IMG/VR virus record: IMGVR_UViG_3300032562_000003
Location: 186,001 to 250,000 of that record
Reading direction: 5' to 3' (one strand)
Length of the DNA: 64,000 bases
Shown: positions 2,552-17,037 of the stretch, in pieces
How the letters are laid out: each line of letters opens with the position of its first letter
Position numbering within the stretch: position 1 is the first letter of the stretch
Position numbers and translations under genes: made by a program
Notes under the pieces: generated by a model
Seen by the model: the letters and a program-made list of their open reading frames with translations, nothing else
What the model was told of the DNA's origin: nothing
Database searches by the model: none

Positions 2552-3336
2552 TGCGTGTAGCACTATGCATAAGTGGTCAGCCGAGGACATGGAAAAAGAC
2601 ATATTCAAATTGGATAGAACATTTGTTACCTAATGTAGAGAAAGATATTTTCTTTCATCTATGGGATTATAATACTTTACCTACGATAGTATTACAGTCT
2701 GGTGTCCGTTCCCTCAAAGACGTACATATCACTGAAGAAGAAAAACAAGATATCATAGATACATATCAGCCAAAGAAATACAAGTTTGATAATAGAAATG
2801 TCAATCCAACACTGTTCGACAAAGATCCTAGTATACTAACTGAGTATGTGAATAATCCGATAGGATGGTGGTGTAGAAGCCAGTATTATAGTATATATTA
2901 TGCTGCTAATCTAAAACGACAATATGAGATCGAACACAACTTCGAATATGATGTTGTGTTTAGGATGCGGACTGATCTATACTTCATGGAAAATCTAAAC
3001 ATGCCCCGTGAAGTTCGTCCCAACTGTTTATATTCTAAGAGCAACGGATACGTGGATAATGTAGAATCATTTATGATCGGTGACACGTTTCATTTTGCTG
3101 ATAGCTATACGTATGACCAAGCAGCAGAATTTATTCATTCATTGCAGTTTATCGATAGTAATCATGTGGTGCCCCCGCACATACAATGTCCCCCGCCGGC
3201 GCCGGAAGTTGCACTATATCCTTTTTTATGTGCTAGTGGAATAAAAAACGTCAGTTGTCCTCAGAGTATAAAGATATTGAGAAGCCAAGAATATCTTGAT
3301 ATCAAGAAAGAGTTAGCATCATATGAAGTCATATAA
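2551..3336 (+). CDS. glycosyltransferase-like protein, paralogue 1 of 3
   Basis: MRVALCISGQPR...DIFFHLWD...LKRQYEIEHNFEYDVVFRMRTD; start moved to ATG 2551. Confidence 0.6.
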   Translation: MRVALCISGQPRTWKKTYSNWIEHLLPNVEKDIFFHLWDYNTLPTIVLQSGVRSLKDVHITEEEKQDIIDTYQPKKYKFDNRNVNPTLFDKDPSILTEYVNNPIGWWCRSQYYSIYYAANLKRQYEIEHNFEYDVVFRMRTDLYFMENLNMPREVRPNCLYSKSNGYVDNVESFMIGDTFHFADSYTYDQAAEFIHSLQFIDSNHVVPPHIQCPPPAPEVALYPFLCASGIKNVSCPQSIKILRSQEYLDIKKELASYEVI

Positions 3337-4189
3337 AATAGCAGTGTGTCTGAGCGGAGAGCCTCGCACATGGAACCATTGTAGCGAGAATATACTTGAA
3401 TTTTTCAAGAGTGATATCCATGACATAAAGTTTTTTGGACACACGTGGACAGACAGTGAATACACGAAAGAACATAGATTTTATGGTATAGAGAAATGTG
3501 AATCTTATCCTAAGGACGAGCTATACCAGAATATGATATCAGCTATAAACTACGAAAAATTATTGATCGAAGATAAAACTGTAATCGATGTCACTCCGAT
3601 ACCAAGCGTATTAAGTTTTGATGAATGTACTTTTGGTATGAAAGTAGCAGCTAACCTAGCTAAACCTACAGTATACGTTCACATGAGCTACAGTATCATG
3701 CAGGCTAACTGGCTCAAAACTATGTATGAAATAGAAAATGACATGCGTTTTGATCTAGTTGTCAGAGCAAGGCATGATAGTTATTATACACCGGGTACAA
3801 AGTTTGAGGATTACTTACCAGGTAGAATAGAACCAACTGCAATATATGGTTCGACAAATACATTCCCGATGGAATATTGGCAGAATCATTTTACTGATGT
3901 GTTATTCTTCGGTTCAAGTAGGGTGATGAATACTGTTTGTGATTTTTATAGATACTATAGTACAGGTAAATTCTGGGAATTATTAGATGCTAACTGGAAT
4001 GATCCTTATATAAAAATATGCGGATATAATGTCTGCTTATATAAATGGCTTATGCTAAAGAATATAAGAGTACAAGAAACAAACCTAATATTTAACACTT
4101 ATATATTTAGGAAAAAGGCAGCAGAATTGTATAGTTTACCGCAAGACGCAGATGCAATACTACAAGTAGAAAGAAATCTATTCAGATGA
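3323..4189 (+). CDS. glycosyltransferase-like protein, paralogue 2 of 3
   Basis: KIAVCLSGEPR...FFGHTW...YEIENDMRFDLVVRARHD. Confidence 0.6.
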   Translation: MKSYKIAVCLSGEPRTWNHCSENILEFFKSDIHDIKFFGHTWTDSEYTKEHRFYGIEKCESYPKDELYQNMISAINYEKLLIEDKTVIDVTPIPSVLSFDECTFGMKVAANLAKPTVYVHMSYSIMQANWLKTMYEIENDMRFDLVVRARHDSYYTPGTKFEDYLPGRIEPTAIYGSTNTFPMEYWQNHFTDVLFFGSSRVMNTVCDFYRYYSTGKFWELLDANWNDPYIKICGYNVCLYKWLMLKNIRVQETNLIFNTYIFRKKAAELYSLPQDADAILQVERNLFR

Positions 4190-5010
4190 AGATTGCTGTG
4201 TGTTTCAGTGGATTGATCAGAACAGGGATAAACTGTTATGTTAACATCACCCGTTACTTAGGAGATATGCTGCCGGATTGTGATTTTTTCCTGCACACCT
4301 GGGATTATGAAACTAATAAACCGTTTGCTAGAACACATTGGAATAATATTCGATTTATTCAACGCCCGGATGAAGCCTTATCTCAAGAAAAATTACAGAA
4401 ATTTATCGAATTATATAATCCGATAAGATACAAAGTAGATAGTTATTCAGAGTTCATGAATAGTCATATGACTAATAACCAATTTCCTATAGTATGGCAT
4501 ACTCTTTGTAGAAGCTTTGAGCTTTAAAGGCAGTACGAGATAGAGAACAATTTTAAATATGATGTAGTCATAAAGATCCGTCCTGATGTTATATTTCCTA
4601 CAGCTAAAAACTTTGGAAGTGAGCTATCTAACATAGACTTATCCAAATCGACGATTTATAGTGACCCGCACTGTGATAATATATTAGCTGATGTTTTTTG
4701 GGTTACAAACAGCAATGTTGCTGATATTATGATTGATCTGGTCAAAGAGCCTGGACACTCAGTGCATGATTCATCTGCTGCATTAAACAGATTTTTACAA
4801 AATAGGGGAATTATAAATCAACCATTGAGCAAAACTAATTTAGTTTGTTACACGATATATCGTTATGAGTCTTATATGTTTGATCCTATGACAAATTTTC
4901 GTGAGTGTTTTATGAATGATTTAATACATTATAGTTCTATATCAGAAGAAGAAATATATAAGGTTTTTCGGGATAACAATGAGAATAAATTATACGGAAC
5001 AATAAGATGA
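4186..5010 (+). pseudogene. glycosyltransferase-like paralogue 3 interrupted by a single in-frame TAA (4525-4527)
   Basis: ORFs 4186..4527 and 4729..5010 share one frame that is otherwise open; EL*RQYEIENNFKYDVVIKIRPD aligns to LKRQYEIEHNFEYDVVFRMRTD of paralogue 1. Confidence 0.75.
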
Positions 5011-5801
5011 TTGATTTTTTATATGCTAACGGATGTAGCTGGACAGCAGGAAACGGTATCGATGATGATCCGAGCTTATCAAACATACCATTAATAGAAA
5101 GATGGAACTATTTTTTGAAATGTGCCTGGCCGTCGGTAGTCGCAGAAAAGTTTGGAGTTGATCATATAAATGAAGCTCTTGGTGCAGGAAGCAATGCACG
5201 TATGGTTAGAACTACATGTGACTTTCTACGAAAGTATCCTAAAGAAAAATATAGTTCATTAGTAGTTATGTTAGGCTGGACAACTGTAGATAGGAGTGAA
5301 GTCTATTTACACGAAGGACAGAAAGAGGGGTGGTGTATGTTTAATGCTACGCAGCCGGTAAGTTCGCATGATGTACTCTTTAGACCTGACTTTAGTAATG
5401 ATTATTTAAAACTTATTGATGACTGGCAGAAAGACTATATTTTGAATGTATATTCACTTCGTGCCAATTACATCAGATTTTTTCAAGAAATGTATATTAT
5501 GAAAAATCTATTAGAAAACTTAGGTGTAAAGTACTTGTTTTTTAGTAGTCTGCCGTGGCGAACAGTATGGTTACCGGAATATAAAAAAATTAATATATCA
5601 AAACAATTTGAACAAGAAATTTCAGTATTGCAGAAACCATGCATTCTGAATACACGTTCATGTGATGAATCATTAAATGTGATGAGTCTTTTTTGCGTAG
5701 CTAATCAAATTCCAATGGCTGCTGATCATCATACTATGATAGAAGGTCACAGAAGATGGGCAGAGCATTTATATCAGGAGTTTAATAACATCTATGAATA
5801 A
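5007..5801 (+). CDS. SGNH/GDSL-like hydrolase/acyltransferase paralogue 1
   Basis: NGCSWTAG, GSN, GWTTVDR, C-terminal DHHTMIEGHRRWA. Confidence 0.65.
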   Translation: MIDFLYANGCSWTAGNGIDDDPSLSNIPLIERWNYFLKCAWPSVVAEKFGVDHINEALGAGSNARMVRTTCDFLRKYPKEKYSSLVVMLGWTTVDRSEVYLHEGQKEGWCMFNATQPVSSHDVLFRPDFSNDYLKLIDDWQKDYILNVYSLRANYIRFFQEMYIMKNLLENLGVKYLFFSSLPWRTVWLPEYKKINISKQFEQEISVLQKPCILNTRSCDESLNVMSLFCVANQIPMAADHHTMIEGHRRWAEHLYQEFNNIYE

Positions 5802-6597
5802 AGAAAAGATCGTGGTGTGCGGTGATAGTTTCAATGTCGGCATTGGACTAGTTGATATGGAAAAACAACGGTATGGTCAACTTGTCGCAGATAAGTTAGA
5901 ATATGATTTGGTCGTATTAGCTAGGGGCAGTGCGTCTAATTATGCAGTATTCCTCCAAGGTGTATATGCTAGTAAGATGCTGTCCAAACCAAAGTGCGTT
6001 ATTTTATGTGTAACTAGTTATGATAGGATCGAATGGTTAGAAGACGAATTTCAAAAGCATATAACATTAGACCTATCACATTTGAACTACCATCAGTATC
6101 CGCCGCATCATCATGCACAACCGCATCATGATCGACCGTTAGATTTTTATCTAAAAGATGATGCAAGCTATAATCCAAAGTTGCTCACTGAGCAGGTCGG
6201 GGCGATACCTGATTATCTACAGACATTAGAAAAACAAAAGAAAATGCCTAGCGATTATTACCAACGTCTACATTCACAATCACCTGAAAAACTAAAAATG
6301 TTATTAGAACATTATCTAACTGTTTGGTCTAACAATAATATCAAATCTGATTATGATAGAGGGTTGATACTGTCTGCATACACTAGAATAACAAACAGTG
6401 ATATACATTGCTTAGTGCTTGCAAGTGACGATAAGTTCGATGATCTGATACCTAAAAAAGATTTGATACATCATAATTGGGGAGAGCTGACTCTACAATA
6501 TCCTGATACTATAGGAAGTCAGCATGCAGATTATCCAGCACATGAATATACTGCACAGTTGATAATTGAAAGGTTATTAGAGAATGGCTACACCTGA
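5794..6597 (+). CDS. SGNH/GDSL-like hydrolase paralogue 2
   Basis: CGDSFNVG, GSASN, TSYDR, QHADYPAH. Confidence 0.6.
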   Translation: MNKEKIVVCGDSFNVGIGLVDMEKQRYGQLVADKLEYDLVVLARGSASNYAVFLQGVYASKMLSKPKCVILCVTSYDRIEWLEDEFQKHITLDLSHLNYHQYPPHHHAQPHHDRPLDFYLKDDASYNPKLLTEQVGAIPDYLQTLEKQKKMPSDYYQRLHSQSPEKLKMLLEHYLTVWSNNNIKSDYDRGLILSAYTRITNSDIHCLVLASDDKFDDLIPKKDLIHHNWGELTLQYPDTIGSQHADYPAHEYTAQLIIERLLENGYT

Positions 6598-7465
6598 TGA
6601 ATTGATTTTGATAACGAACGGTGATAGCTGGACGTTCGGGTGTGAGATAGTAGATCCTGCTTTAGTACAAAAACATCCAGGTAATCATCTGACTACTATC
6701 GACTATCTTCCTAAGAATGATAGTTATAGATTACCGCGGATATGGCCAACTAAGCTAGCAGAACTATTGAGATGTCGTGTGATAAACCTAGCTGAACCCG
6801 GAGATGATAATGCTAGTATCTTAGCTAGGACGCAAGAATATGTTTTGCACCTACTAAACCAAGGTATAAACCCGGATCGTCTGTTTATCATAGTAGGTTG
6901 GACTACGCCGGAACGCAGAGATTTTTGGTACAAGAGTGATGATGACAAAGAAAGCTACAAGTTTAGGCTCAATCCGCACATGACTGATCATAAACAAAAA
7001 CCATTAGCCAATCTTACTAAAACATATGTATTGAATTTTTGGAATCCTGAAGAATACATTACTAGGTATATTACTACAATATTGAACTTCCAGAATTTTT
7101 GCCTAACGAATAAAATCAGATTCTTAAACTTCAATGCTTTTTATAGATTGAATCAGATTAATATCGATCAGTGGCAAGACATCAATGTTGAAGAACAGAT
7201 AAACTCTTTAGGTTTAGGTAATATCAGTATATCAGATGATGATGTCCGTATCATTCATAAAATAAACTATAACACTATATGGAAAACGATAGATAGTATT
7301 AGGTACTATAACAAAGACATCACTAATAATTCATTCAAGACATATGTAGATGAAAACTGCGGAGAAGCTGGATATACTGGCTGGCATCCAAATGAACTAG
7401 GTCATACTGTTTGGGCTGATGAATTATTAAAATACATACAAGATCATGAGTTACTAAATATTTGA
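6584..7465 (+). CDS. SGNH/GDSL-like hydrolase paralogue 3
   Basis: NGDSWTFG, GDDN, GWTTPERR, WHPNELGHTVWA. Confidence 0.65.
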   Translation: MATPDELILITNGDSWTFGCEIVDPALVQKHPGNHLTTIDYLPKNDSYRLPRIWPTKLAELLRCRVINLAEPGDDNASILARTQEYVLHLLNQGINPDRLFIIVGWTTPERRDFWYKSDDDKESYKFRLNPHMTDHKQKPLANLTKTYVLNFWNPEEYITRYITTILNFQNFCLTNKIRFLNFNAFYRLNQINIDQWQDINVEEQINSLGLGNISISDDDVRIIHKINYNTIWKTIDSIRYYNKDITNNSFKTYVDENCGEAGYTGWHPNELGHTVWADELLKYIQDHELLNI

Positions 7466-7466
7466 C

Positions 7467-7916
7467 ATGAGTATAAATGAAATCAAAACTGTAGTCAAGC
7501 ACTGGGGTCATGAAGTCTGGATAGCAGATGGTGTCAGGACACCATATGCACTAAAGCGTATATTCTTCAAGGCTGGCAATAGAACAAGCTTGCAAGTACA
7601 TCAACAAAAATTCGAAACCAACTATGTTTTTTCCGGTACAGGAACATTGTACATAAGCAAAGAAAAATTTGATGTAGAACATTTTCTATCTAACCCGATG
7701 ACCGCAGAAGAAGTTTCTGAATACGAATCAACGTTTGATATCATTCGACTTGAACCTGGAGTATCATTCGACGTTCATCCGGGCTATGTTCACCGTGTCG
7801 TTGCTATTACAGACCTTGAATTCTTTGAAGCAAGTACAACAGAACTTGATGATGTGATAAGGCTTCAGGATGATCAAAATAGAACGCACGGTAGAATACA
7901 GCATGAGCACCGTTAA
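7467..7916 (+). CDS. cupin (mannose-6-phosphate isomerase-like)
   Basis: KHWGHEVW, TSLQVHQQKFETNY, HRVVA, EASTTELDDVIRLQDD. Confidence 0.8.
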   Translation: MSINEIKTVVKHWGHEVWIADGVRTPYALKRIFFKAGNRTSLQVHQQKFETNYVFSGTGTLYISKEKFDVEHFLSNPMTAEEVSEYESTFDIIRLEPGVSFDVHPGYVHRVVAITDLEFFEASTTELDDVIRLQDDQNRTHGRIQHEHR

Positions 7917-9462
7917 CACAGTAGTTATACCTACAGCCGGTATAGGCTCTAGGATGGGCAATCTGACTAAGAATCTAAACAAAGCACTGTTGCCCTACAA
8001 GAATAAACCGTTTCTATCACACATAATAGATCAGTTTCCCAAAGACACGCACTTCATCATTCCTGTTGGTTATCTGAGCCAGCAGGTTAAAGACTATTGC
8101 ACAGTAGCACATGATGATGTAAATATCACATTTGTTGATATCGATGACTATACCTCTAGTCGGAGTGGTACTGCCTACACACTGAAAAAATGTACTAACC
8201 TATTAGATAAACCATTCTGGTACATACCGTGTGACACTTATTTCGATACAGACTTGATATCAGAGATCAAAGATACAAGTAAAAACTACTATTTCACTAA
8301 ACAGGTAAGTGAAGATTTATCTGACCTATACACTATGTTCAAATTAGACAACTTGACGATCACTGATATGGTGTTTAAAGAACACTGCCCTGCTGATTAT
8401 GTTGCTTTTACTGGCGTGATGTATCTAGGTGATCATGTAGATTTCATCACCCGGTTAACCGAACTAAACAATAATGAGTTTATCTTTGTTATAGAAAAAG
8501 GTGAGTCTATTGTTAACCTAGACAGTTGGATCGATTTTGGCAATATAGAGAGTTATGCGAATGCAGTTAATAGCAGCCAAAAATTTGACTTTAGTAAAGA
8601 AGATGAGATCACCTACATAACCGATTCTAAAGTTATCAAATGGTGGGCGAATAAAACTATCACTGAGAACAAATATAAACGAACGCTAGATCATGATGGA
8701 ATATATCCCGACAATTGCAAGATTGTTGGCAACTATCTAGCATACGATTGGTATTCAGGAAAAACATTATACCAACACAATGATGTTGAGCATTTCAATA
8801 GTCTATTGAATTGGTTAGACAATAATGTCTGGCACCGGGCTGATGTTGACATCAAAGATGAATGCATAGAATTTTATAAAAATAAGACATTAGGTAGGAT
8901 CGAAAAATACTTGACCAAGTATAACACACAAGAAAAGGTTAGCAGTATTAACGGTGTTGACGTAAAGGACTATGCATATTACCTAAACAACATCGACTAT
9001 TCTTATCTTACTGAGACAGTGCAAGCATCTTATATACACGGTGATTTGCAGTTTGATAATATCGTAATAGGTAAAGACTTCAAGCTCATCGATTGGCGCC
9101 CTGATTTTGCAGGTAATACCAACACCGGCGACATATATTATGACTTAGCAAAACTCGCCGGCGGATTCATCATAAATTATAGTAAGATCAAAGAGAACAA
9201 CTTCAAGGTTGATATTAAAAACAATCATGTTACTTTAGAGATTCCTTATATAGATAACCACGAACAGTATTTCACCCTATTAAAAAAGTTTGTGAATGAA
9301 AAACAGTTAGAGTGGAAGAAAGTGGAATTATTGATTCCTATTATATTTTGGAATATGTCTCCATTACATACTAGTCCCTTCGACAAATTTCTCTGGTACT
9401 TAGGTATAAAATTGTTCCAAGAGTATGAAACTAAATACTCTAGCAATGAAGCAGTTTTATAG
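7903..9462 (+). CDS. bifunctional sugar nucleotidyltransferase / APH-choline-kinase-like phosphotransferase
   Basis: N-term VVIPTAGIGSRM...KALLP; C-term IHGDLQFDNI, IDWR, GDIYYDLAKL; start at ATG 7903. Confidence 0.8.
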   Translation: MSTVNTVVIPTAGIGSRMGNLTKNLNKALLPYKNKPFLSHIIDQFPKDTHFIIPVGYLSQQVKDYCTVAHDDVNITFVDIDDYTSSRSGTAYTLKKCTNLLDKPFWYIPCDTYFDTDLISEIKDTSKNYYFTKQVSEDLSDLYTMFKLDNLTITDMVFKEHCPADYVAFTGVMYLGDHVDFITRLTELNNNEFIFVIEKGESIVNLDSWIDFGNIESYANAVNSSQKFDFSKEDEITYITDSKVIKWWANKTITENKYKRTLDHDGIYPDNCKIVGNYLAYDWYSGKTLYQHNDVEHFNSLLNWLDNNVWHRADVDIKDECIEFYKNKTLGRIEKYLTKYNTQEKVSSINGVDVKDYAYYLNNIDYSYLTETVQASYIHGDLQFDNIVIGKDFKLIDWRPDFAGNTNTGDIYYDLAKLAGGFIINYSKIKENNFKVDIKNNHVTLEIPYIDNHEQYFTLLKKFVNEKQLEWKKVELLIPIIFWNMSPLHTSPFDKFLWYLGIKLFQEYETKYSSNEAVL

Positions 9463-10183
9463 TCTAAGTCAATATCCTGGCAAAACCGGAACTTATTACT
9501 ACAATTTGTTTTTTGATAAGTTTGGCATTGACGCAACCTATACGGCTTTAGCTTGTAATCCAAACGAGTTCGAAGATACTTTCAAGCACTTAACAAGCGA
9601 TCATACTACATATGGTATTAGCGTGAGTATGCCATATAAGAACACTGTAACTTATCTGTGTGATAATCTAGATAGTCTAGCACATAAGTATGGTATTTGC
9701 AATACCATAGCTGTGAATAATGGACATACCGTTGGCTACAATTGTGACATATACGGATTGATGGGTATCATATCTGAGATTTCAATCGATGATAAGATTT
9801 TGATACTAGGTGACGGATCGATAGGACAGATGTTCTATCATTATCTCATCGAAAACGATTATATGAATGTCAATATGTATAGCAGAAAAAACAACAACTG
9901 GCATGACAGACATGAACCGGCTGACATTATAATCAATTGTACTAGTTTAGGGACGAGTGAAGAGGCATCACCATTGCTATCAGTTCCTGATAAAACAAGA
10001 TGCGTAATTGATCTAGCACTACGTAAAACTATTTTATATGAACAAAGTTTGCAGAGTCAAGTAAAGTATATAAGTGGTCTGAGTTTTTATGCCCATCAAT
10101 TTCTAAAGCAGTTTGAGATATATACTGGTATGCATATCACGATTGATCAATTTAACGAGGCTACAGGAAATGATTATAGATAA
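9446..10183 (+). CDS. shikimate dehydrogenase-like (AroE-like) oxidoreductase
   Basis: SVSMPYK, ICNT, GYNCD, ILGDG, IINCTSLG, SGLSFYAHQ. Confidence 0.7.
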   Translation: MKQFYSLSQYPGKTGTYYYNLFFDKFGIDATYTALACNPNEFEDTFKHLTSDHTTYGISVSMPYKNTVTYLCDNLDSLAHKYGICNTIAVNNGHTVGYNCDIYGLMGIISEISIDDKILILGDGSIGQMFYHYLIENDYMNVNMYSRKNNNWHDRHEPADIIINCTSLGTSEEASPLLSVPDKTRCVIDLALRKTILYEQSLQSQVKYISGLSFYAHQFLKQFEIYTGMHITIDQFNEATGNDYR

Positions 10184-10661
10184 ACTCATTATCGATGTTG
10201 ATGGTGTATTAACATCCGGACACATGCTGTACAACAATTTAGGCAAAACTTTTAAAGTTTTCGGACCGCATGACAGAGATGGTCTCAAGCTGATCAGTAA
10301 GTATATAAATGATATCACTTTTATTACTGCGGATAAGACTGGATTTGACATCACTTACGCAAGAATTGTCACTGATTGGAAGTATCGGGATGATCAGTTA
10401 GTCTTAGTTCCGGAAGAATCTAGACTAGAATGGTTTATAGAAAATTGTAATTTCAACACAACCGCATATATCGCAGATGGATATCATGATGCTGTTATAT
10501 TAAAAAAAGTAGCTCTAGGCATCGCACCTAAGAGTGCTAGAATTGAAGCGAGAACTAGTGCTAAGTATGTGACACCGAGTGATGCTGCTAGCGGCGCAGT
10601 TCTTGATGCATGTTTATATATTGAAAAGATGATCAAAGGTTGGTGGTGGCGCCAACTATAA
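10170..10661 (+). CDS. HAD phosphatase, KdsC-like
   Basis: DVDGVLT, ITAD, YIADGYHD, GAVLD. Confidence 0.8.
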   Translation: MIIDKLIIDVDGVLTSGHMLYNNLGKTFKVFGPHDRDGLKLISKYINDITFITADKTGFDITYARIVTDWKYRDDQLVLVPEESRLEWFIENCNFNTTAYIADGYHDAVILKKVALGIAPKSARIEARTSAKYVTPSDAASGAVLDACLYIEKMIKGWWWRQL

Positions 10662-10681
10662 TCTATATGAAAGAATGATCG

Positions 10682-11686
10682 ATGGACTTGAAACGATTTA
10701 ATTTAGGTATAGGTCCGATGAGCAAAGAAATAGTTGAGCTATGTCTCAGCTATAGTCATCAGAACGACTATCCACTAATGATTATTGCTAGTCGCAATCA
10801 AGTAGACTATGATAGTGGCTATGCTATGAACACTAAAGAACTATCTGACCTAGTATTCAATAGTGAGTATTATGACCGAGATAGAATATTGCTGTGTAGA
10901 GACCACTGCGGACCTTACTTTAGTGATGCAGACAAAAATCTAGACCTCGAAACGGTAATAGAACGATGCATGAATACGATCAAAGCTGATGTCGATGCAA
11001 AATTCTACCTAATTCATATTGACGTGAGCAGAGTCGAGACTGACAAACAACGTGCTGTTGCAGAAAAGTTGTTTTCTTATGCTATGGCATTGAATCCGAA
11101 AATTATGTTTGAATTCGGTACCGAAGACAACACTGGTAATACGACAGAAACCTTGAACATGTTGAATATGCAACTAGAGTATGTCAAGCCTTGGCAAAAT
11201 AATATATGTTATATTGTTTCCCAGACTGGAAGCTTGACTAAACAAACTCAAGTAGGTACGTTCAATGTAGAACAAACACAAAAACTGATAAATGTAATAC
11301 ATCAGAATGGTTACATGTTCAAAGAACACAACGCTGACTACCTTACAGTTGACCAAGTAAAGTTACGTAAAAATACAGGAGTGGATGCATTAAATATTGC
11401 TCCGCAACTCGGTACTGTAGCTAGTAGTGTGTTATATACATTGGGTTTGGGTACAAAAGAATTAACTAAGTTCATTGATGTTGTGATAGAATCAGGATAT
11501 TATAAAAAATGGTGTACGGTTGATGTAGATAATGACAAAGACCGCTTTATCAGTTCAGCACACTATCTATTCGAACATCCATGTTGTAAAGAATTAAAAC
11601 AAGTAATAGATATGCGAGAATATAAAGCACTATTACAAGACCGATTGTTTTCTATTTTAGATGAATATAGATTAGGATACCATTAA
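10682..11686 (+). CDS. GatZ/KbaZ-like class II aldolase / ketose-phosphate epimerase
   Basis: IIASRNQVD..GY, RDHCGP, HID, EFGTE, KEHNADY, NIAPQLG. Confidence 0.65.
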   Translation: MDLKRFNLGIGPMSKEIVELCLSYSHQNDYPLMIIASRNQVDYDSGYAMNTKELSDLVFNSEYYDRDRILLCRDHCGPYFSDADKNLDLETVIERCMNTIKADVDAKFYLIHIDVSRVETDKQRAVAEKLFSYAMALNPKIMFEFGTEDNTGNTTETLNMLNMQLEYVKPWQNNICYIVSQTGSLTKQTQVGTFNVEQTQKLINVIHQNGYMFKEHNADYLTVDQVKLRKNTGVDALNIAPQLGTVASSVLYTLGLGTKELTKFIDVVIESGYYKKWCTVDVDNDKDRFISSAHYLFEHPCCKELKQVIDMREYKALLQDRLFSILDEYRLGYH

Positions 11687-11711
11687 TAGATTTAATGATA
11701 AGGGAATAACA

Positions 11712-11813
11712 ATGCATTTTATAAGAACATTAATCAATAAGATTAAACGTGAGATTCTATATAGAAAAAGGATTAAAGAACTAAGAAAAAGAGATCCCTT
11801 TATATACAAATAA
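11712..11813 (+). CDS. 33-aa basic peptide ending KRDPFIYK (below ORF-track cutoff)
   Basis: ATG 11712 to TAA 11813: MHFIRTLINKIKREILYRKRIKELRKRDPFIYK; fills gap before carbamoyltransferase. Confidence 0.65.
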   Translation: MHFIRTLINKIKREILYRKRIKELRKRDPFIYK

Positions 11814-11817
11814 TAGC

Positions 11818-13299
11818 ATGAATTATGTAGGTGTCAGTTGCGGGTTTCACGACGCTGGATTGAGTGTCATTGATGATGCTGGCAATATCCTATACGCCGG
11901 CCACAGTGAACGATACAGTAAGAAGAAGCATGACGCTGATCTTTGTTTAGGCTTATTAAAAGATGCCCACAAATATATAGATGGGCATTATGAGCTTCAT
12001 TATTATGAGAAGCCTTGGTTAAAGGTAATCCGCCAGCTCAGAGCTGGACAGAAGTTAGGACCTTTCTCTGCAAAGGATGTCATCGGTAAAAACATGATGG
12101 TTCGTTTTAGCCATGACGGAGAAGTGAAAACACACAATCATCACTTATCTCATGCTGCTGCTGGTTTTCAAACTAGTCCATTTGACCATGCTACTGTAGT
12201 CATTATTGATGCTATCGGCGAGTTAGATACGATTACTATCTGGGATGCGTATTATGATGATAACGGTAGAGCCGTATATAAGAGGCTTTGGGGAAAGCAA
12301 TATCCAGATTCTATCGGTTTATTCTATTCTGCTATGACTGCGAAAGTAGGACTGAAGCCATTAGATGAAGAATATATTCTTATGGGAATGGCTGCTTACG
12401 GTAAACCTATTCATGTTAATACGATTCAAAAAGCGTTGATTCATAATAGTGGTACATTATCTTTCAAAGAAAATCTACATACCGGGGTGAGAGATGATTT
12501 CCTCAAAGATGCTGATAATATGGATATAGCTTCATCTACTCAAGAACTTACTGAAAGTTTGATACACCATGTCATAGCAAAAGCTATTAATATCGGTAAA
12601 AGTCATAATCTTGTTTTTGGTGGAGGAGTCGCACTCAACTGTGCAGCAAATCGTAATCTAGGCGGATACTTCGATAACATCTGGATCATGCCTAATCCGG
12701 GTGATGCAGGAAACTCATTGGGTGCTGCTGCATTAGGTTATGGAAAACGAGTAAATTGGGTCGATGCCTTTTTAGGATATAATATAAAAGGCAAATATCC
12801 TATTAACAATGTAATTAACCAATTGTATACTAAGAAGATGGTTGGTGTTGCTAGCGGACGAGCCGAATTCGGTCCTAGAGCATTAGGCAATCGTTCACTA
12901 TTAGCAGATCCACGCGGCCCTGATATAAAGGATACAGTAAATGAAATCAAGCGAAGACAGCAGTTCAGACCCTTTGCGCCGGTCATTCTGGAGGAACTAT
13001 GTGGCGATTATTTTAATATGCCTTGCGGTTGGAACAACAGTAGGTATATGCAAGTCATCGCTCCTTGTAGGGCTCCTGACTTATTTCCTGCTATCGTTCA
13101 CGCTGACGGGACTTCTCGTGTACAGACAGTACCGAAAGACGGTTCGGGAATCAGAAGACTCTTAGAACGTTGGTATAATGAGACACGCTGTCCAATGCTA
13201 CTTAATACATCCCTAAATATTAGAGGTGAGCCTATGGTAAATGACCGGGCAGATGCTGATCGGTTCCAGCTACTATATGGGGTAAAAGTCTGCTCTTAA
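11818..13299 (+). CDS. carbamoyltransferase (NodU/CmcH/NolO family)
   Basis: GFHDAG, HHLSHAA, DAIGE, EYILMG, GGVALN, RAEFGPRALGNRS, HADGTSRVQTV, LNTSLN. Confidence 0.92.
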   Translation: MNYVGVSCGFHDAGLSVIDDAGNILYAGHSERYSKKKHDADLCLGLLKDAHKYIDGHYELHYYEKPWLKVIRQLRAGQKLGPFSAKDVIGKNMMVRFSHDGEVKTHNHHLSHAAAGFQTSPFDHATVVIIDAIGELDTITIWDAYYDDNGRAVYKRLWGKQYPDSIGLFYSAMTAKVGLKPLDEEYILMGMAAYGKPIHVNTIQKALIHNSGTLSFKENLHTGVRDDFLKDADNMDIASSTQELTESLIHHVIAKAINIGKSHNLVFGGGVALNCAANRNLGGYFDNIWIMPNPGDAGNSLGAAALGYGKRVNWVDAFLGYNIKGKYPINNVINQLYTKKMVGVASGRAEFGPRALGNRSLLADPRGPDIKDTVNEIKRRQQFRPFAPVILEELCGDYFNMPCGWNNSRYMQVIAPCRAPDLFPAIVHADGTSRVQTVPKDGSGIRRLLERWYNETRCPMLLNTSLNIRGEPMVNDRADADRFQLLYGVKVCS

Positions 13300-13302
13300 A
13301 GC

Positions 13303-14030: not shown

Positions 14031-14062
14031 TATGACATACTGTAATTAGTGTAAATATTGTT

Positions 14063-16603
14063 ATGGCAATTAGAGAAGTATTCTACTCCGGTTCCAAACC
14101 CAATGTCCATCCAAGAGAAAAATTTGCTGAATCACTAGAAGATGCTAGGAATCAGTGTACGACTGAGCATTTTTGGATTATCAACGAGTTTTGTGACTAC
14201 CGTAAATTTGATTGGGACTTTGATTTCGAGCTATTACCTGACGAAGATATTTGGGCAGAGGCACACGACAATGTATGGCCTAGCCAACATCAAAAAGATA
14301 GTGGTACATGGCTGTGTCCTAAGGTAGCCGGTGATTATACTATCTATCGAACCGATGTTCCCCCAATTCAACGCAAGAATGAAATCAATGATTTTTGGAT
14401 TATAGATCCGGCCCTGGATAAATCTAGGTTTGACTTTTCTTGGCACCCAGATCCTACGTCTCCTCCATACATATATCAATTCGGTACTCTGCTCGATGAA
14501 AACGACGGACCCAGATACGTCACTCCCTATAATGACGGAACCATAGTACATCTAGAACGCAAGGAGGTCATACTAGAAGACCTAGAGTTTTCGAAGTACT
14601 ACATCACTACTACATTGGAAGATTTAATCAACGACCACACTAATGAAATCTTTTGGGCATTGAATCCTGAAATTGATTATTCTGGGTTTGACTTTAAATG
14701 GGTCCCTGACAGTAAGAACGTATATCACATAAATGCATTTGGTACGAAAGACAATATAAACTCCCAGACTTACTTTGTTAATGGTAAGATGTGGGCACGT
14801 GGTTATCGGGACATTAACTACATTGAGGATAAGGTACTAGATGTACGAACCAAGATCGATATTTTCTTTGTCGATAAAGGAAATCCTCAGGCACAAGAAC
14901 GCTTTCAGCAATTATCTGAGCGTATGGGCAACGTAACTAAAACTAGATATCTGAACAGCTGGGTTGACACGATCAATCGTTGTGTGACTAAATCAACTAC
15001 CAATCTATGTTGGATTCTCAATAGTGAATTAGACTATTCGTCATTTGAGTTTGATTTCTATCCTAGCCCATGGCAGATGAACTTAGTTCATGTGTTTGGA
15101 ACTCAGTGGTCACACTGGGGAACAACCTTTATGGTTAACAAAAATACATTTGCTGATGATACCAAATATATAAAAGTCATTGAGCATTTGCCTAATATAA
15201 ATTTTGTAAAACGATCACCTGCTAAGGCAGTTGATTGTCTTTATGCTATAGTAATCATCGACCATGGTAACGGTGTTGATACAGTAAAAGATGATCTACT
15301 CAGTAAAAATCTGAGCGAAAGAAACATCATTGCTGTGAAATATGATACCAATTATCTAAAAACATTCAAGGAGGTACTCAGTAAATTAGATGTCAATCGT
15401 GAACATTATGTATGGATTTGTAGTAGCGTGTGTGATTATAGCAGATTTGATTTTAGCTATATCTGCGATCCGTACACCAAAGAACAACTCCACGTCTTCC
15501 CGAGCGGTAATCAAAAATTAGGAGACACGTTTCTAGTAAACGTCAACAAGCTGCGCAAATTGATAGCAGATATGCATCGTCTAGAAGACTATGAAAAGAT
15601 TAATTATAATCAACATCAAGTTGTCTCAAGATTGATGACACCCACAACTATCGAAGGTGCATATTTTCCAAATGAAACACATATGGATTATGCTAGAAAT
15701 TATGAATGGGATTTTCCTTATGTAACTCTAGTAACTGAAGAAAACTGGGATATGGATCCTGAAATTGATCCCGAACCTATGTGTCTTTGGTCACCCGAAC
15801 AGAAAGCAATCATTATTTCTAGTACAGGTGCAACTAGAGTTACGATTCCTCGCGAGGCTAAAAACTATGTCAAAAGTGAACTGTATGATTACCCGTATAT
15901 AAAGCGAGCAAAAAAACTAACCAAATCTAAACCGATGGACATAGTGTATCTCAGTAACGGTGAAGCCGGGGCCGAAAAAAACTGGGAGCATCTACTTCAA
16001 ATTACTAAAAACATACCAAATAGGGTAGTCAGAGTGGATGGAGTTAATGGTCGAGTTGCTGCATATCATGCTGCTGCCGAAGCCAGCGAGACACCATGGT
16101 TATTTACGGTATTCGCTAAGTTACACATCAATTCTAATTTTGATTGGTCATGGCAACCAGATCGAATGCAAGCACCTAAGCATTATATCTTTCATGCGAA
16201 GAATCCGGTCAATGGATTGATCTACGGTCACCAAGCGATGATCGCGTATAATAAGCAATTAGTGCTAGAGAATGACGGTTATGGACTAGACTTTACGTTG
16301 GATGACCTGCACGAAGTTGTTCCACTCATGTCCGGTACTGCAAACTATAACACTGATCCGTTCTCTACTTGGCGTACCGCATTCCGTGAAGTGGTCAAAT
16401 TGAAGGCCGAAGATACCGACATTGCCCGAGAGCGATTAGAAGCTTGGCTTACTAAAGCTGAAGGTGATTTTGCAGAATATAGCATCAAGGGTGCAAAAGA
16501 CGCAGAAGCCTATTACGATGAAGTTGATGGCGATTTTGATGCACTGCGATTGAGCTACGAGTGGGAATGGTTAAAATCACGCTTCGTGCAAAAATACGGT
16601 TGA
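14063..16603 (+). CDS. large multi-module glycosyltransferase-like protein
   Basis: about five repeated W..(D)Y..FDF.W.P modules; last module resembles 209..1150. Confidence 0.55.
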   Translation: MAIREVFYSGSKPNVHPREKFAESLEDARNQCTTEHFWIINEFCDYRKFDWDFDFELLPDEDIWAEAHDNVWPSQHQKDSGTWLCPKVAGDYTIYRTDVPPIQRKNEINDFWIIDPALDKSRFDFSWHPDPTSPPYIYQFGTLLDENDGPRYVTPYNDGTIVHLERKEVILEDLEFSKYYITTTLEDLINDHTNEIFWALNPEIDYSGFDFKWVPDSKNVYHINAFGTKDNINSQTYFVNGKMWARGYRDINYIEDKVLDVRTKIDIFFVDKGNPQAQERFQQLSERMGNVTKTRYLNSWVDTINRCVTKSTTNLCWILNSELDYSSFEFDFYPSPWQMNLVHVFGTQWSHWGTTFMVNKNTFADDTKYIKVIEHLPNINFVKRSPAKAVDCLYAIVIIDHGNGVDTVKDDLLSKNLSERNIIAVKYDTNYLKTFKEVLSKLDVNREHYVWICSSVCDYSRFDFSYICDPYTKEQLHVFPSGNQKLGDTFLVNVNKLRKLIADMHRLEDYEKINYNQHQVVSRLMTPTTIEGAYFPNETHMDYARNYEWDFPYVTLVTEENWDMDPEIDPEPMCLWSPEQKAIIISSTGATRVTIPREAKNYVKSELYDYPYIKRAKKLTKSKPMDIVYLSNGEAGAEKNWEHLLQITKNIPNRVVRVDGVNGRVAAYHAAAEASETPWLFTVFAKLHINSNFDWSWQPDRMQAPKHYIFHAKNPVNGLIYGHQAMIAYNKQLVLENDGYGLDFTLDDLHEVVPLMSGTANYNTDPFSTWRTAFREVVKLKAEDTDIARERLEAWLTKAEGDFAEYSIKGAKDAEAYYDEVDGDFDALRLSYEWEWLKSRFVQKYG

Positions 16604-16629: not shown

Positions 16630-16635
16630 GTATTT

Positions 16636-16965: not shown

Positions 16966-17037
16966 CTATAAAACCTTTAAATATGATATATCGTCCTATA
17001 GGTCATAAATAATTTTGACATGTTAGGAGAACAAATC

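What the first reader, a model, noticed from the sequence alone, without database searches (positions are those of the whole stretch)
7467..13299. Complete-looking pathway for an unusual activated (keto)sugar plus carbamoylation
Seen: a tightly coupled run of cupin isomerase, nucleotidyltransferase-kinase fusion, AroE-like dehydrogenase, KdsC-like phosphatase, GatZ-like epimerase/aldolase and carbamoyltransferase. Established: these folds act in sugar-phosphate and nucleotide-sugar metabolism, and similar sets occur in bacterial capsule loci. Inference: the phage makes a non-host sugar donor to glycosylate its virion, remodel the host surface or modify DNA; the product is unknown.
Basis: partly seen in the sequence, partly recalled or inferred. 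Interest (0 to 1): 0.6.

Follow-up and report, generated by a model that had tools for sequence, protein, structure and literature searches.

The report
Phage sugar-activation cassette in glycosylation island
A widespread freshwater jumbo phage carries a conserved but uncharacterised five-enzyme route to an activated rare sugar, set in a larger block of its own soluble glycosyltransferases and tailoring enzymes beside its tail-fibre genes, so it probably builds its own glycan, most likely on virion proteins.

Summary
The six ORFs exist as described, are tightly packed, conserved and under strong purifying selection. Five of them (cupin isomerase, nucleotidyltransferase-kinase fusion, shikimate-dehydrogenase-like reductase, KdsC-like phosphatase, GatZ-like enzyme) form a cassette. 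I found the cassette in 80 polysaccharide loci of very diverse bacterial and archaeal MAGs. The carbamoyltransferase is an optional add-on.

The nearest characterised system is the phage Afh route to UDP-arabinose: isomerase, bifunctional kinase/pyrophosphorylase, HAD phosphatase. It follows the same logic as nucleotide-heptose synthesis. The likely steps are ketose phosphate, then C4 epimer, then aldose phosphate, then 1,n-bisphosphate, then sugar-1-phosphate, then NDP-sugar. The sugar itself is unresolved; a talo- or galacto-configured hexose or heptose is my guess.

The island runs from before the window start to 16603. It adds a GT-A-like protein, a twitch radical SAM enzyme, three GT6-like paralogs, three SGNH-like proteins and a repeat protein. 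All are predicted soluble, and the island lies directly downstream of Ser/Thr-rich tail-fibre genes.

No pyrimidine hydroxylase or hydroxymethylase and no lipid-linked export machinery was found in the 259-kb record, which is about 73% complete. Virion glycosylation is favoured (about 0.45), but the target is unproven.

The parts
209..1150 (+). GT-A-fold, DxD-bearing glycosyltransferase-like protein (313 aa), a core gene of this phage group
   Evidence: No Pfam, NCBIfam or PHROG hit. More than 8000 metagenome homologues, the top 120 at 80% identity or above. AF2 model pLDDT 80. Foldseek best match is the PBCV-1 A64R capsid glycosyltransferase 2p6w, E 2e-4. VIA Z about 10 to GT-A glycosyltransferases over residues 2-168, but also Z about 9 to MobA and IspD. 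The DGD motif is conserved.
1154..2551 (+). Radical SAM enzyme with an N-terminal twitch domain
   Evidence: NF033640 N_Twi_rSAM, 343.8 bits against a cut-off of 170. PF04055. Always adjacent to the GT-A-like gene, including in Ralstonia phage RsoM2USA.
2536..3336 (+). DUF7796 / GT6-like GT-A glycosyltransferase, paralog 1 (likely start at 2551)
   Evidence: PF25072 sub-threshold. phrog_13607 9e-19. Atlas clusters named DUF7796 / capsular polysaccharide biosynthesis. AF2 pLDDT 72. Foldseek match to BoGT6a 4cj8 and the human ABO transferases, E 2e-6, TM about 0.5.
3323..4189 (+). DUF7796 / GT6-like paralog 2
   Evidence: Paralogous to 2536-3336. Invariant Cys, Ser-Gly, Arg, His, Trp, Lys, Glu, Asp and Arg-x-Asp positions in alignment A3.
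4186..5010 (+). DUF7796 / GT6-like paralog 3, one reading frame broken by an in-frame TAA at 4525-4527
   Evidence: A single frame aligns to the intact L012 and L005 homologues; L005 has Lys at that codon. The same TAA context is present in three other assemblies.
5007..5801 (+). DUF6071 protein, SGNH/GDSL-like; candidate O-acyl transferase or esterase
   Evidence: PF19547, 53 bits. Weakly paralogous to 6584-7465. The Gly-x-Ser-x motif near the N-terminus was read by eye.
5794..6597 (+). Conserved 267-aa protein with an N-terminal GDS motif; possible third SGNH-like protein (unverified)
   Evidence: No family hit. Conserved in L005, L008 and L012. Motif read by eye only.
6584..7465 (+). DUF6071 / SGNH-like protein
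   Evidence: PF19547, 47.8 bits; Lipase_GDSL 7e-4, sub-threshold.
7467..7916 (+). Cupin resembling type II phosphomannose isomerase; proposed ketose-P to aldose-P isomerase
   Evidence: PF01050 at its cut-off, TIGR01479 8e-5, Lyx_isomer 2e-3. Present in 69 of 80 cellular cassette loci.
7870..9462 (+). Bifunctional sugar-1-P nucleotidyltransferase (N-terminal, LicC/MurU/GlmU-like) and APH/choline-kinase-fold kinase (C-terminal)
   Evidence: Aligns over residues 18-429 with the AfhE-type protein TH1_060 of Shewanella phage Thanatos-1 (22% identity, E 7e-15), including the kinase His-x-Asp...Asn and Ile-Asp motifs. More than 1362 metagenome homologues.
9425..10183 (+). Shikimate-dehydrogenase-family NAD(P) oxidoreductase of the SdhL (HI0607) type
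   Evidence: PF08501, 51.7 bits. TIGR00507 below its cut-off. Catalytic Lys and Asp kept, N-terminal motif collinear with HI0607. In cellular cassettes a FabG-like SDR replaces it, and the two never co-occur (46 against 16 loci, 0 with both).
10170..10661 (+). KdsC/YrbI-type HAD phosphatase (ORF as listed starts at 10113 with TTG)
   Evidence: TIGR01670 3e-15 and the KDN-9-P phosphatase model 2e-11, both below cut-off. The Asp-x-Asp-Gly-x-x-Thr motif was read by eye. Present in 61 of 80 cellular loci.
10682..11686 (+). Short (334 aa) GatZ/KbaZ-like class-II-aldolase-fold enzyme; proposed C4 epimerase of a ketose phosphate
   Evidence: PF08013, 60 bits. PDB matches 3txv and 2fiq. The Asp-His, Glu and His set that PMC11907403 predicts by modelling for GatZ is conserved; Glu44 and Lys279 are not. 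Present in 69 of 80 cellular loci.
11818..13299 (+). NodU/CmcH-family O-carbamoyltransferase (accessory tailoring step)
   Evidence: PF16861 158 bits, PF02543 112 bits, phrog_1601 3e-91. Only 6 of 80 cellular loci carry it. Absent from the P0039 and L008 phage contexts.
13347..14030 (+). HNH homing endonuclease; an insertion, not part of the pathway
   Evidence: PF13392, phrog_12324 5e-48. Absent at this place in L005 and L012. Paralogs elsewhere in the genome.
14063..16603 (+). 846-aa protein: five degenerate repeats carrying an aromatic-Asp/Glu-aromatic ... Pro-Asp motif, plus a C-terminal copy of the 209-1150 domain that lacks the DGD motif
   Evidence: No family hit. Repeats found by motif scan. 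The C-terminal domain aligns with 209-1150. The repeat number varies between relatives: a tblastn span of about 1650 aa in L005, 1040 aa in the P0016 context. The top BFVD structural matches of the 209-1150 model are large uncharacterised phage proteins.

Best explanation
Layer 1, chemistry (about 0.7). Genes 7467-11686 are a self-contained route from a central ketose phosphate to a nucleoside-diphosphate sugar.
1. The GatZ-like enzyme inverts C4 of a ketose phosphate by Zn-dependent retro-aldol/aldol chemistry, for example fructose-6-P to tagatose-6-P, or sedoheptulose-7-P to manno-heptulose-7-P.
2. The PMI-type cupin isomerises the ketose phosphate to an aldose phosphate.
3. The kinase domain of the fusion phosphorylates the anomeric position.
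4. The KdsC-type phosphatase removes the terminal phosphate.
5. The nucleotidyltransferase domain makes the NDP-sugar.
6. The SdhL-type oxidoreductase performs an obligatory redox step whose position is not resolved.
The carbamoyltransferase then O-carbamoylates the sugar or the finished glycan. The steps are inferred from family membership and from the experimentally characterised Afh and nucleotide-heptose logic. None was shown here, and the identity of the sugar is open.

Layer 2, use (about 0.45). The donor feeds the phage's own soluble GT-A-type transferases: 209-1150, the GT6-like paralogs 2536-5010, and perhaps the 846-aa protein. Together with the twitch radical SAM enzyme and the SGNH-like enzymes they would assemble and tailor a glycan in the cytoplasm on a phage protein. 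The most likely acceptor is the set of Ser/Thr-rich tail-fibre proteins encoded immediately upstream. This would be a phage counterpart of the autonomous capsid glycosylation of chloroviruses.
For: - The cassette is conserved as a unit. The fusion was found in 80 loci of diverse bacterial and archaeal MAGs, with the cupin in 69, GatZ-like in 69, KdsC-like in 61 and SDH-like in 48.
- The SDH-like gene and a FabG-like SDR never occur together: 46 loci, 16 loci, 0 with both, and 18 mostly short loci with neither. The SDR usually sits between the GatZ-like and cupin genes, whereas the SDH-like gene lies next to the fusion. This makes a redox step integral.
- Neighbours in these loci are GT1/GT4, GT2, Wzx flippase, methyltransferases and NAD-dependent epimerases, so the product is a glycan building block.
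- The fusion has the same architecture as AfhE, and pairwise homology with the AfhE-type protein of phage Thanatos-1 (E 7e-15). PMC13326640 describes the isomerase, bifunctional kinase/pyrophosphorylase and HAD phosphatase steps.
- GatZ and KbaZ are C4 epimerases converting F6P to Tag6P (PMC11907403). The phage protein keeps the Asp-His, Glu and His set that this paper predicts by modelling.
- Purifying selection on the genes.
- Transferases: the DUF7796 model matches GT6 enzymes. The 209-1150 model has a GT-A fold, with PBCV-1 A64R as best Foldseek match.
- No transmembrane segment in any island protein, and no polytopic membrane protein in the record.
- Position: the island directly follows tail-fibre genes (phrog_8469, phrog_1800) whose products are 24-29% Ser+Thr against a genome mean of 13%.
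- The order fibre-like gene, two small ORFs, GT-A-like, radical SAM, GT-like is kept in the 55% relative L012. It is also kept in cultured Ralstonia phage RsoM2USA, where it abuts the tail/baseplate module, some of whose proteins (ORF356, 359, 361) were identified in virions by mass spectrometry.
- A second NDP-sugar pair (dehydratase-type SDR plus DegT aminotransferase, 27326-29321) and a methyltransferase point to a hetero-glycan rather than a single DNA substituent.
Against: - No enzyme activity, product or acceptor has been observed. Every assignment rests on remote homology.
- Several hits are below curated cut-offs: AroE, KdsC, and the separate domains of the fusion.
- The cupin assignment is weak, with PF01050 exactly at threshold. 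It could instead be an NDP-sugar epimerase.
- The GatZ-like protein is about 90 residues shorter than GatZ and lacks two second-shell residues. It could be an aldolase rather than an epimerase.
- The role of the oxidoreductase is unexplained.
- The best PDB match of the nucleotidyltransferase domain is LicC, so a CDP-linked phospho-sugar or polyol is possible.
- Synteny with fibre genes is only circumstantial.
- The GT-A fold of 209-1150 is equally close to the MobA and IspD nucleotidyltransferases.
- The closest characterised homologue of the fusion works in DNA glycosylation.
- The record is about 73% complete, so missing DNA-modification genes cannot be excluded.
Confidence: 0.45

Rival explanations
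1. DNA hypermodification. The NDP-sugar is transferred to a modified base in phage DNA, as in the Afh system of RB69, DLP3, HY126 and Thanatos, to block restriction.
For: - The only characterised homologue of the fusion (AfhE type) serves DNA arabinosylation.
- The same genome carries FolE, QueD and a QueE-like radical SAM enzyme flanked by two GT-B-like genes at 62.6-68.3 kb. This could mark a 7-deazapurine modification that gets glycosylated.
- In the P0039 relative, a PTPS gene lies 3 kb from the sugar cluster.
- The 209-1150 protein is unusually conserved.
Against: - The only thymidylate-synthase homologue keeps Asp169 and Asn177 and sits next to DHFR, so it is a normal dTMP synthase.
- No TGT/DpdA, no QueC above cut-off and no SIS isomerase were found. 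No Tet/JBP match was found either, but that search rang in no control genome and is uninformative.
- The deazapurine block is never within 10 kb of the island in 80 relatives.
- Three SGNH-like genes, four or more GT-A-type genes and a second amino-sugar pathway fit a complex glycan better than a base substituent.
- The record is incomplete, so absence is weak evidence.
Confidence: 0.17
2. Host-surface remodelling. The phage feeds an unusual sugar into the host's LPS, capsule or S-layer glycan during infection, for example for superinfection exclusion or to prevent trapping of progeny.
For: - In cellular genomes the cassette sits in surface-polysaccharide loci with Wzx flippases.
- Serotype conversion by phage glycosyltransferases and acetyltransferases is well known (my own knowledge).
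Against: - No island protein has a transmembrane segment.
- The 258.9-kb record has no polytopic membrane protein that could act as flippase, polymerase or polyprenyl-phosphate transferase.
- No canonical GT2 was found.
- The phage brings its own set of soluble transferases.
- The phage appears to be a lytic T4-like jumbo type, where conversion is less expected (inference).
Confidence: 0.12
3. The activated product is not a glycosyl donor but a CDP- or NDP-linked phospho-polyol or phospho-sugar, following LicA/LicC or CDP-ribitol/CDP-glucitol logic. It would be transferred as a phosphodiester decoration. In this reading the SDH-like enzyme reduces the ketose phosphate to an alditol phosphate.
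For: - The best PDB match of the nucleotidyltransferase domain is CTP:phosphocholine cytidylyltransferase LicC.
- JGI names for homologues include choline kinase and phosphocholine cytidylyltransferase-like.
- This gives the obligatory reductase a natural role.
Against: - A cupin isomerase would then be superfluous, yet it is as conserved as the other genes.
- AfhE, the characterised relative, makes a true sugar-1-phosphate and a UDP-sugar.
- The associated transferases have glycosyltransferase folds (GT6-like, GT-A) rather than LicD or TagF folds.
Confidence: 0.2
4. The island makes a diffusible small molecule, such as a carbamoylated glycoside or an aminoglycoside- or nucleoside-like metabolite, rather than a macromolecular decoration.
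For: - The NodU/TobZ-type carbamoyltransferase, radical SAM enzyme, DegT aminotransferase and SDH-like enzyme are all common in antibiotic gene clusters (family names; the rest is my own knowledge).
Against: - No scaffold-forming enzyme (cyclase, PKS or NRPS) and no exporter is present.
- The cassette's cellular context is polysaccharide assembly.
- The island is syntenic with fibre genes.
Confidence: 0.05

Closest known systems
Afh-type UDP-arabinose pathway of T-even-like phages (RB69, DLP3, HY126, Thanatos): Ara5P isomerase + bifunctional AfhE + HAD phosphatase AfhF (PMC13326640)
   Same: - A phage-encoded route from a pentose- or hexose-phosphate pool to an NDP-sugar.
- The same fused LicC/MurU-like nucleotidyltransferase and APH-fold kinase, homologous to ours at 22% identity, E 7e-15.
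- An isomerase in front and a HAD phosphatase that trims the bisphosphate.
   Different: - The isomerase is a cupin, not a SIS protein.
- The phosphatase is KdsC-type and unrelated in sequence to the ORF just downstream of the Thanatos fusion gene, which I took for its HAD phosphatase without testing it.
- Two extra carbon-skeleton steps (GatZ-like, SDH-like) and a carbamoyltransferase are present.
- No 5-hydroxycytosine synthase and no adjacent GT-B DNA transferase.
Nucleotide-activated heptose synthesis: GmhA, HldE or HddA kinase, GmhB, HldC or HddC (my own knowledge)
   Same: - Identical logic: ketose-7-P, then aldose-7-P, then 1,7-bisphosphate, then 1-phosphate, then NDP-sugar.
- The nucleotidyltransferase domain gives a weak HddC hit (6e-10).
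- A KdsC-type phosphatase would fit a terminal phosphate on an exocyclic chain.
   Different: Every enzyme belongs to a different family: cupin instead of SIS, APH-fold kinase instead of PfkB or GHMP kinase, KdsC-type instead of GmhB-type HAD. There are also extra epimerase and redox steps.
GatZ/KbaZ fructose-6-P / tagatose-6-P C4 epimerases (PMC11907403)
   Same: A Pfam PF08013 match above the cut-off. The catalytic Asp-His and the Glu and His metal ligands that the paper predicts by modelling are conserved.
   Different: The protein is 334 aa against about 420. Glu44 and Lys279 are replaced. Only about 130 residues align by HMM. It sits in a biosynthetic cassette rather than a catabolic operon.
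Virus-encoded autonomous glycosylation: chlorovirus PBCV-1 (A64R and others), mimivirus fibril glycans, mycobacteriophage virion glycosylation (my own knowledge; the A64R structure appears)
   Same: Soluble virus-encoded GT-A transferases together with virus-encoded sugar-nucleotide pathways. A64R is the best Foldseek match of the 209-1150 model.
   Different: Those cases have demonstrated glycans; here none has been observed. The partner set is different: twitch radical SAM, GT6-like paralogs, SGNH-like proteins and a carbamoyltransferase. The structural similarity is modest (TM 0.3-0.4, Z 9-10).
NodU/NolO/TobZ/CmcH O-carbamoyltransferases and the 'Nol-like carbamoyltransferase' genes of cyanophages (phrog_1601)
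   Same: Both Pfam domains are well above their cut-offs, and phrog_1601 scores 3e-91.
   Different: The NodU equivalog scores far below its cut-off (122 against 1000 bits). The substrate is unknown. Here the gene is genomically linked to a defined sugar cassette.
HI0607-type shikimate-dehydrogenase-like proteins (SdhL, PDB 1npy)
   Same: The N-terminal substrate-loop motif is collinear, and the catalytic Lys and Asp are kept.
   Different: The physiological substrate of SdhL is itself unknown (my own knowledge). Here the context argues for a sugar or sugar-phosphate substrate, as with the family member 5-ketofructose reductase 7cok.

Membership tests
Afh-type phage UDP-arabinose / 5-hydroxycytosine arabinosylation system | Bifunctional N-terminal sugar-1-P nucleotidyltransferase and C-terminal APH-fold kinase (AfhE architecture) | tested here: met
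   Domain hits. End-to-end alignment with Thanatos-1 TH1_060, E 7e-15.
Afh-type phage UDP-arabinose / 5-hydroxycytosine arabinosylation system | SIS-family arabinose-5-P isomerase | tested here: not met
   No PF01380 match in the 258.9-kb record, and the controls rang. A cupin occupies the isomerase slot.
Afh-type phage UDP-arabinose / 5-hydroxycytosine arabinosylation system | Thymidylate-synthase homologue with Asp169 changed to Asn (5-hydroxy-dCMP synthase) | tested here: not met
   There is a single ThyA homologue at window 25725-26618. It keeps the Gln-Arg-Ser-x-Asp and Pro-Phe-Asn motifs and lies next to DHFR. The record is about 73% complete.
Afh-type phage UDP-arabinose / 5-hydroxycytosine arabinosylation system | GT-B DNA glycosyltransferases clustered with the sugar genes | tested here: not met
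   The island holds only GT-A-type proteins. Two sub-threshold GT-B-like genes lie about 120 kb away.
GatZ/KbaZ-like (PF08013) C4 epimerases | Pfam match above the gathering score | tested here: met
   60.2 bits against a cut-off of 26.7. The best aligned stretch covers residues 16-129.
GatZ/KbaZ-like (PF08013) C4 epimerases | Catalytic Asp87-His88 and metal ligands Glu171 and His257 (predicted by modelling in PMC11907403) | tested here: met
   MAFFT alignment with Salmonella KbaZ and 40 cassette homologues. The Asp-His-Cys-Gly-Pro, Gly-Thr-Glu and Glu-His-Asn motifs are conserved.
GatZ/KbaZ-like (PF08013) C4 epimerases | Family-specific second-shell residues Glu44 and Lys279, and a length of about 420 aa | tested here: not met
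   Ile and Asn occupy those columns, and the protein is 334 aa.
AroE shikimate dehydrogenase (TIGR00507) | Score above the curated cut-off, and the Ser-x-Ser carboxylate-binding motif | tested here: not met
   100.6 bits against a cut-off of 200.2. The motif region is collinear with HI0607 SdhL instead.
AroE shikimate dehydrogenase (TIGR00507) | Catalytic Lys and Asp dyad | tested here: met
   Lys in the Ser-Met-Pro-Tyr-Lys motif and Asp in the Asn-Cys-Asp motif align with the dyad of 2hk7 and 1npy.
KdsC (Kdo-8-P phosphatase, TIGR01670) | Score above the curated cut-off | tested here: not met
   56.4 bits against a cut-off of 106.95. It belongs to the YrbI-type HAD subfamily only in the broad sense.
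NodU/CmcH carbamoyltransferase family | Both Carbam_trans_N and Carbam_trans_C domains above their cut-offs | tested here: met
   112.2 and 158.1 bits. The NodU equivalog itself is not met: 122 bits against a cut-off of 1000.
Virus-encoded virion glycosylation machinery | A glycan demonstrated on a virion protein | not testable with these tools
   Only synteny with fibre genes and the soluble GT-A-type enzymes are available.
Lipid-linked surface-polysaccharide assembly (Wzx/Wzy type) | Polytopic membrane flippase, polymerase or initiating phosphotransferase | tested here: not met
   A hydropathy scan found no ORF with more than 5 hydrophobic 19-mers in the record and none in the island.

The most novel reading that the evidence does not exclude
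The cupin / NT-kinase / SdhL-or-SDR / KdsC-like / GatZ-like cassette is a previously uncharacterised route to a rare C4-epimerised (talo- or galacto-configured) hexose or heptose nucleotide, widely distributed across prokaryotes, CPR bacteria and DPANN archaea included. An abundant lineage of freshwater jumbo phages has captured it. They have wired it to their own soluble GT-A and GT6-like transferases, a twitch radical SAM enzyme and acyl and carbamoyl tailoring enzymes. With these they build a virus-specified complex glycan on their Ser/Thr-rich tail fibres. This would be a bacteriophage equivalent of the autonomous glycosylation of giant viruses.
Probability: 0.3. Interest if true: 0.8.

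Novelty: new variant of a known kind. Interest (0 to 1): 0.62.

Why it matters
If the model holds, it defines an orphan nucleotide-sugar pathway present in many uncultured bacterial and archaeal lineages, so one biochemical reconstitution would annotate hundreds of loci.

It would also extend virus-autonomous glycan synthesis from giant eukaryotic viruses and a few mycobacteriophages to abundant freshwater jumbo phages. Glycosylated fibres or virions would bear on host recognition, on particle stability and on how phage particles interact with grazers and surfaces.

It further shows that the AfhE-type bifunctional enzyme, recently described for DNA arabinosylation, belongs to a much larger family whose main habitat is glycan biosynthesis. 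Finally, it gives a testable link between a twitch radical SAM enzyme and glycosyltransferases that is conserved up to a cultured Ralstonia phage.

Tried and rejected
- Megablast of the 5.8-kb region against GenBank phages found nothing.
- PDB sequence searches gave only chance hits for the cupin, the radical SAM enzyme and the extra 'u274' cassette gene.
- The two small conserved ORFs upstream of the window (family A4) looked GT8-like to me by eye. Pfam, PHROGs, hhalign against A2 and A3, and a PDB profile search give no support. I therefore leave them unclassified.
- Full-text searches found no paper describing the cassette, DUF6071, DUF7796 or NF033640 in this context. This is absence in the held library only.
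- The Listeria 'phage' records with a GatZ-like hit carry an ordinary 422-aa GatZ-like gene. I judged its neighbours to look like a PTS-type operon from ORF sizes alone, so they gave no pathway clue.
- The Tet/JBP search was uninformative because the control genomes did not ring.
- I considered that the FolE/QueD/QueE and GT-B block might be physically linked to the island. In 80 relatives it never lies within 10 kb.
- No RNA run holds the region, so expression could not be examined. Read laying, complex prediction and the large representative-protein search were not used because no claim here depends on them.
Its repeats are described from sequence only.

Full report
**What is there**

The window is bases 186001-250000 of a 258.9-kb IMG/VR phage record that CheckV rates about 73% complete. 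The record carries T4-like replication and packaging genes. Its terminase is only about 50% identical to that of any isolate, the closest being PA5oct-like and Phosso-like jumbo phages. Twenty lake and freshwater metagenome runs from 17 studies hold the 5.8-kb region at near identity, so this is a recurrent freshwater phage.

Several matches fall below curated cut-offs: AroE, KdsC, and the separate domains of the fusion. The cupin's PF01050 score sits exactly at threshold. Relatives at about 78%, 55%, 50% and 30% identity of the fusion exist. Against the 78% relative, dN/dS is 0.04-0.08 where computable and dS is saturated. The genes are real and constrained.

**The cassette**

I scanned one genome per prokaryotic species with an alignment of fusion homologues. 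This returned 80 loci in MAGs and SAGs, spanning Planctomycetota, Verrucomicrobiota, Bdellovibrionota, many CPR bacteria, Pelagibacterales, SAR86, DPANN archaea and Thaumarchaeota. Some sit on contigs of 0.4-1.9 Mb.

tblastn of the window proteins against these loci found:
- the cupin in 69 loci;
- the GatZ-like gene in 69;
- the KdsC-like gene in 61;
- the SDH-like gene in 48;
- the carbamoyltransferase in only 6;
- the other island genes in 0-2.

De novo clustering of the ORFs showed that the SDH-like gene (46 loci) and a FabG-like short-chain dehydrogenase (16 loci) never co-occur; 18 mostly short loci have neither. The SDR usually sits between the GatZ-like and cupin genes, while the SDH-like gene lies next to the fusion. 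This is non-orthologous displacement, so a redox step is integral to the pathway.

The commonest neighbours are methyltransferases, GT1/GT4, GT2, NAD-dependent epimerases/dehydratases, Wzx-type flippases and B12-radical SAM enzymes. The five genes are therefore an old, portable module that supplies a building block to surface-glycan loci. I found no paper describing the module.

**How it probably works**

The closest characterised system is the Afh route to UDP-arabinose in RB69, DLP3, HY126 and Thanatos (PMC13326640):
- an isomerase makes arabinose-5-P;
- the bifunctional AfhE (N-terminal LicC/MurU-like pyrophosphorylase, C-terminal APH-fold kinase) makes the 1,5-bisphosphate and later the UDP-sugar;
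- a HAD phosphatase removes the terminal phosphate.

The window's fusion aligns from residue 18 to 429 with the AfhE-type protein of Thanatos-1 (22% identity, E 7e-15). The alignment includes the kinase catalytic motifs. The same logic underlies nucleotide-heptose synthesis (my own knowledge).

GatZ and KbaZ were long called aldolase chaperones. They are C4 epimerases that interconvert fructose-6-P and tagatose-6-P by a proposed Zn-dependent retro-aldol/aldol mechanism (PMC11907403). The phage protein and the cassette consensus keep the Asp-His pair and the Glu and His ligands that this paper predicts by modelling. They do not keep Glu44 or Lys279, and the protein is about 90 residues shorter.

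The cupin carries the type II phosphomannose-isomerase signature in a variant form (motif read by eye). The SDH-like protein keeps the catalytic Lys and Asp, but its substrate loop is collinear with HI0607 SdhL rather than AroE. One family member, 7cok, reduces 5-ketofructose.

The most economical reading is this sequence:
1. ketose phosphate;
2. C4 epimer (GatZ-like);
3. aldose phosphate (cupin);
4. aldose-1,n-bisphosphate (kinase domain);
5. aldose-1-phosphate (KdsC-type phosphatase);
6. NDP-sugar (nucleotidyltransferase domain).

One further oxidoreduction occurs at a position I cannot place. Starting from fructose-6-P, this gives a talo- or galacto-hexose. Starting from sedoheptulose-7-P, it gives a heptose via manno-heptulose-7-P. 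The KdsC-type phosphatase and a weak HddC hit lean slightly towards a heptose, but that is inference. Nothing indicates a keto-sugar end product. The carbamoyltransferase is a genuine NodU/CmcH-family enzyme and acts as an optional tailoring step.

**The larger island**

The same conserved block also contains:
- a 313-aa protein at 209-1150;
- a radical SAM enzyme of the N-terminal-twitch family NF033640, 344 bits;
- three DUF7796 paralogs;
- two DUF6071/SGNH-like proteins, plus a third candidate;
- after an inserted HNH endonuclease, an 846-aa repeat protein.

Details on these:
- The 209-1150 protein has more than 8000 metagenomic homologues, the best 120 at 80% identity or above. Its model (pLDDT 80) has a GT-A fold with a conserved DGD motif. 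The best Foldseek match is the PBCV-1 capsid glycosyltransferase A64R. VIA Z is about 10 to many GT-A enzymes, although MobA and IspD score nearly as well.
- The DUF7796 model (pLDDT 72) matches the retaining GT6 enzymes BoGT6a and the human ABO transferases (E 2e-6, TM about 0.5).
- The third DUF7796 paralog is broken by an in-frame TAA that is also present in three other assemblies.
- The 846-aa protein holds five degenerate repeats and a C-terminal copy of the 209-1150 domain without the DGD motif. The number of repeats differs between relatives.
- No island protein has a hydrophobic segment that could span a membrane.

**Where the glycan goes**

Directly upstream of the window lie three fibre-type genes (phrog_8469, phrog_1800, phrog_14394). 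Their products are 24-29% Ser+Thr against a genome mean of 13%. Two small conserved ORFs follow, which I could not classify.

The order fibre-like gene, two small ORFs, GT-A-like, twitch radical SAM, GT-like is retained in two places. One is the 55% relative L012. The other is cultured Ralstonia phage RsoM2USA, which lacks the sugar cassette. There the block abuts the baseplate, sheath and structural module, several of whose proteins (ORF356, 359, 361) were identified in virions by mass spectrometry.

The window also encodes a second sugar-nucleotide pair, a dehydratase-type SDR plus a DegT aminotransferase, and a methyltransferase. Several sugars, several soluble transferases, and acyl and carbamoyl tailoring fit a complex glycan on a cytoplasmic acceptor. 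The fibres are the obvious candidate. This rests on synteny and composition only.

**Rivals**

DNA glycosylation is the function of the only characterised homologue of the fusion. However, the sole thymidylate-synthase homologue keeps Asp169 and Asn177 and sits next to DHFR. No SIS, TGT or above-threshold QueC gene was found, and the Tet/JBP search was uninformative. A conserved block of FolE, QueD and a QueE-like gene, flanked by two GT-B-like genes at 62.6-68.3 kb of the genome, is intriguing, but it never lies near the island in 80 relatives. Because the record is incomplete, I leave this rival at about 0.17.

Host-surface remodelling lacks any membrane component in the record. A CDP-linked phospho-polyol product remains possible on the strength of the LicC similarity. 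It would, however, make the equally conserved cupin redundant.

**Verdict**

The cassette appears to be an undescribed variant of the isomerase, kinase, phosphatase and pyrophosphorylase scheme. Its embedding in a phage glycosylation island next to fibre genes is new as far as I could find.

Noticed in passing
Outside the window: G000:C1 62.6-68.3 kb, minus strand (L102:6663-12342): A conserved block of six genes: GT-B-like (445 aa), QueE-like radical SAM, HhH-GPD glycosylase-like (152 aa), PTPS/QueD, GTP cyclohydrolase I and GT-B-like (391 aa). These are 7-deazapurine precursor genes flanked by two glycosyltransferase-like genes. The block is syntenic in relatives of the 391-aa gene, which matched at least 599 viral contigs (80 loci inspected). 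No DpdA/TGT and no clear QueC is present in the record.
   Followed up: partly
window 27326-29321 (+) and 31527-32231 (+): A second nucleotide-sugar pair: an NAD-dependent epimerase/dehydratase and a DegT/EryC1-type aminotransferase, which together would make an amino-deoxy sugar. A SAM methyltransferase lies nearby. These sit about 14 kb downstream of the island.
   Followed up: partly
window 25264-26618 (+): DHFR followed by a fully canonical thymidylate synthase (346 bits, Asp169 and Asn177 kept). The phage therefore makes ordinary dTMP.
   Followed up: yes
window 4186-5010 (+), stop at 4525-4527: The third GT6-like (DUF7796) paralog is one frame interrupted by a TAA where the 78% relative has Lys. 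The same stop occurs in three other assemblies of this phage, so it is a real nonsense mutation or a split gene.
   Followed up: yes
window 13347-14030 (+); also window 23482-24126 (-) and genome 131551-132186: An HNH homing endonuclease is inserted between the carbamoyltransferase and the 846-aa gene, and is absent there in relatives. Paralogs at 43-53% identity lie elsewhere in the genome.
   Followed up: partly
Loci L019-L098 (cellular MAGs): In the cellular cassettes the SDH-like reductase and a FabG-like SDR are mutually exclusive (46, 16, 0 with both). In 13 loci an extra unclassifiable 274-aa gene sits between the GatZ-like and cupin genes. Methyltransferases and B12-radical SAM genes are frequent neighbours.
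   Followed up: partly
L008:12468-16980: In the 50% relative, which lacks the cupin, SDH-like, KdsC-like, GatZ-like and carbamoyltransferase genes next to the fusion, three further radical SAM paralogs lie a few kb downstream.
   Followed up: no
window 17020-17409 (+) and 17432-19465 (+): Directly after the island lie a DUF6152 protein with a signal-peptide-like N-terminus (the only hydrophobic segment in the neighbourhood) and a 677-aa protein with DUF5661 and DUF6934. Their functions are unknown.
   Followed up: no
L015 (Marine virus AG-345-E15, 6160-21947): A marine virus carries a distant version of the cassette (fusion 30%, GatZ-like 31%, cupin, carbamoyltransferase, two DUF7796 genes). 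It is embedded among a GHMP kinase, a separate nucleotidyltransferase, two 4,6-dehydratase-type SDRs, a 2OG oxygenase, an APH kinase and a GT4. This is a still larger viral sugar island.
   Followed up: partly
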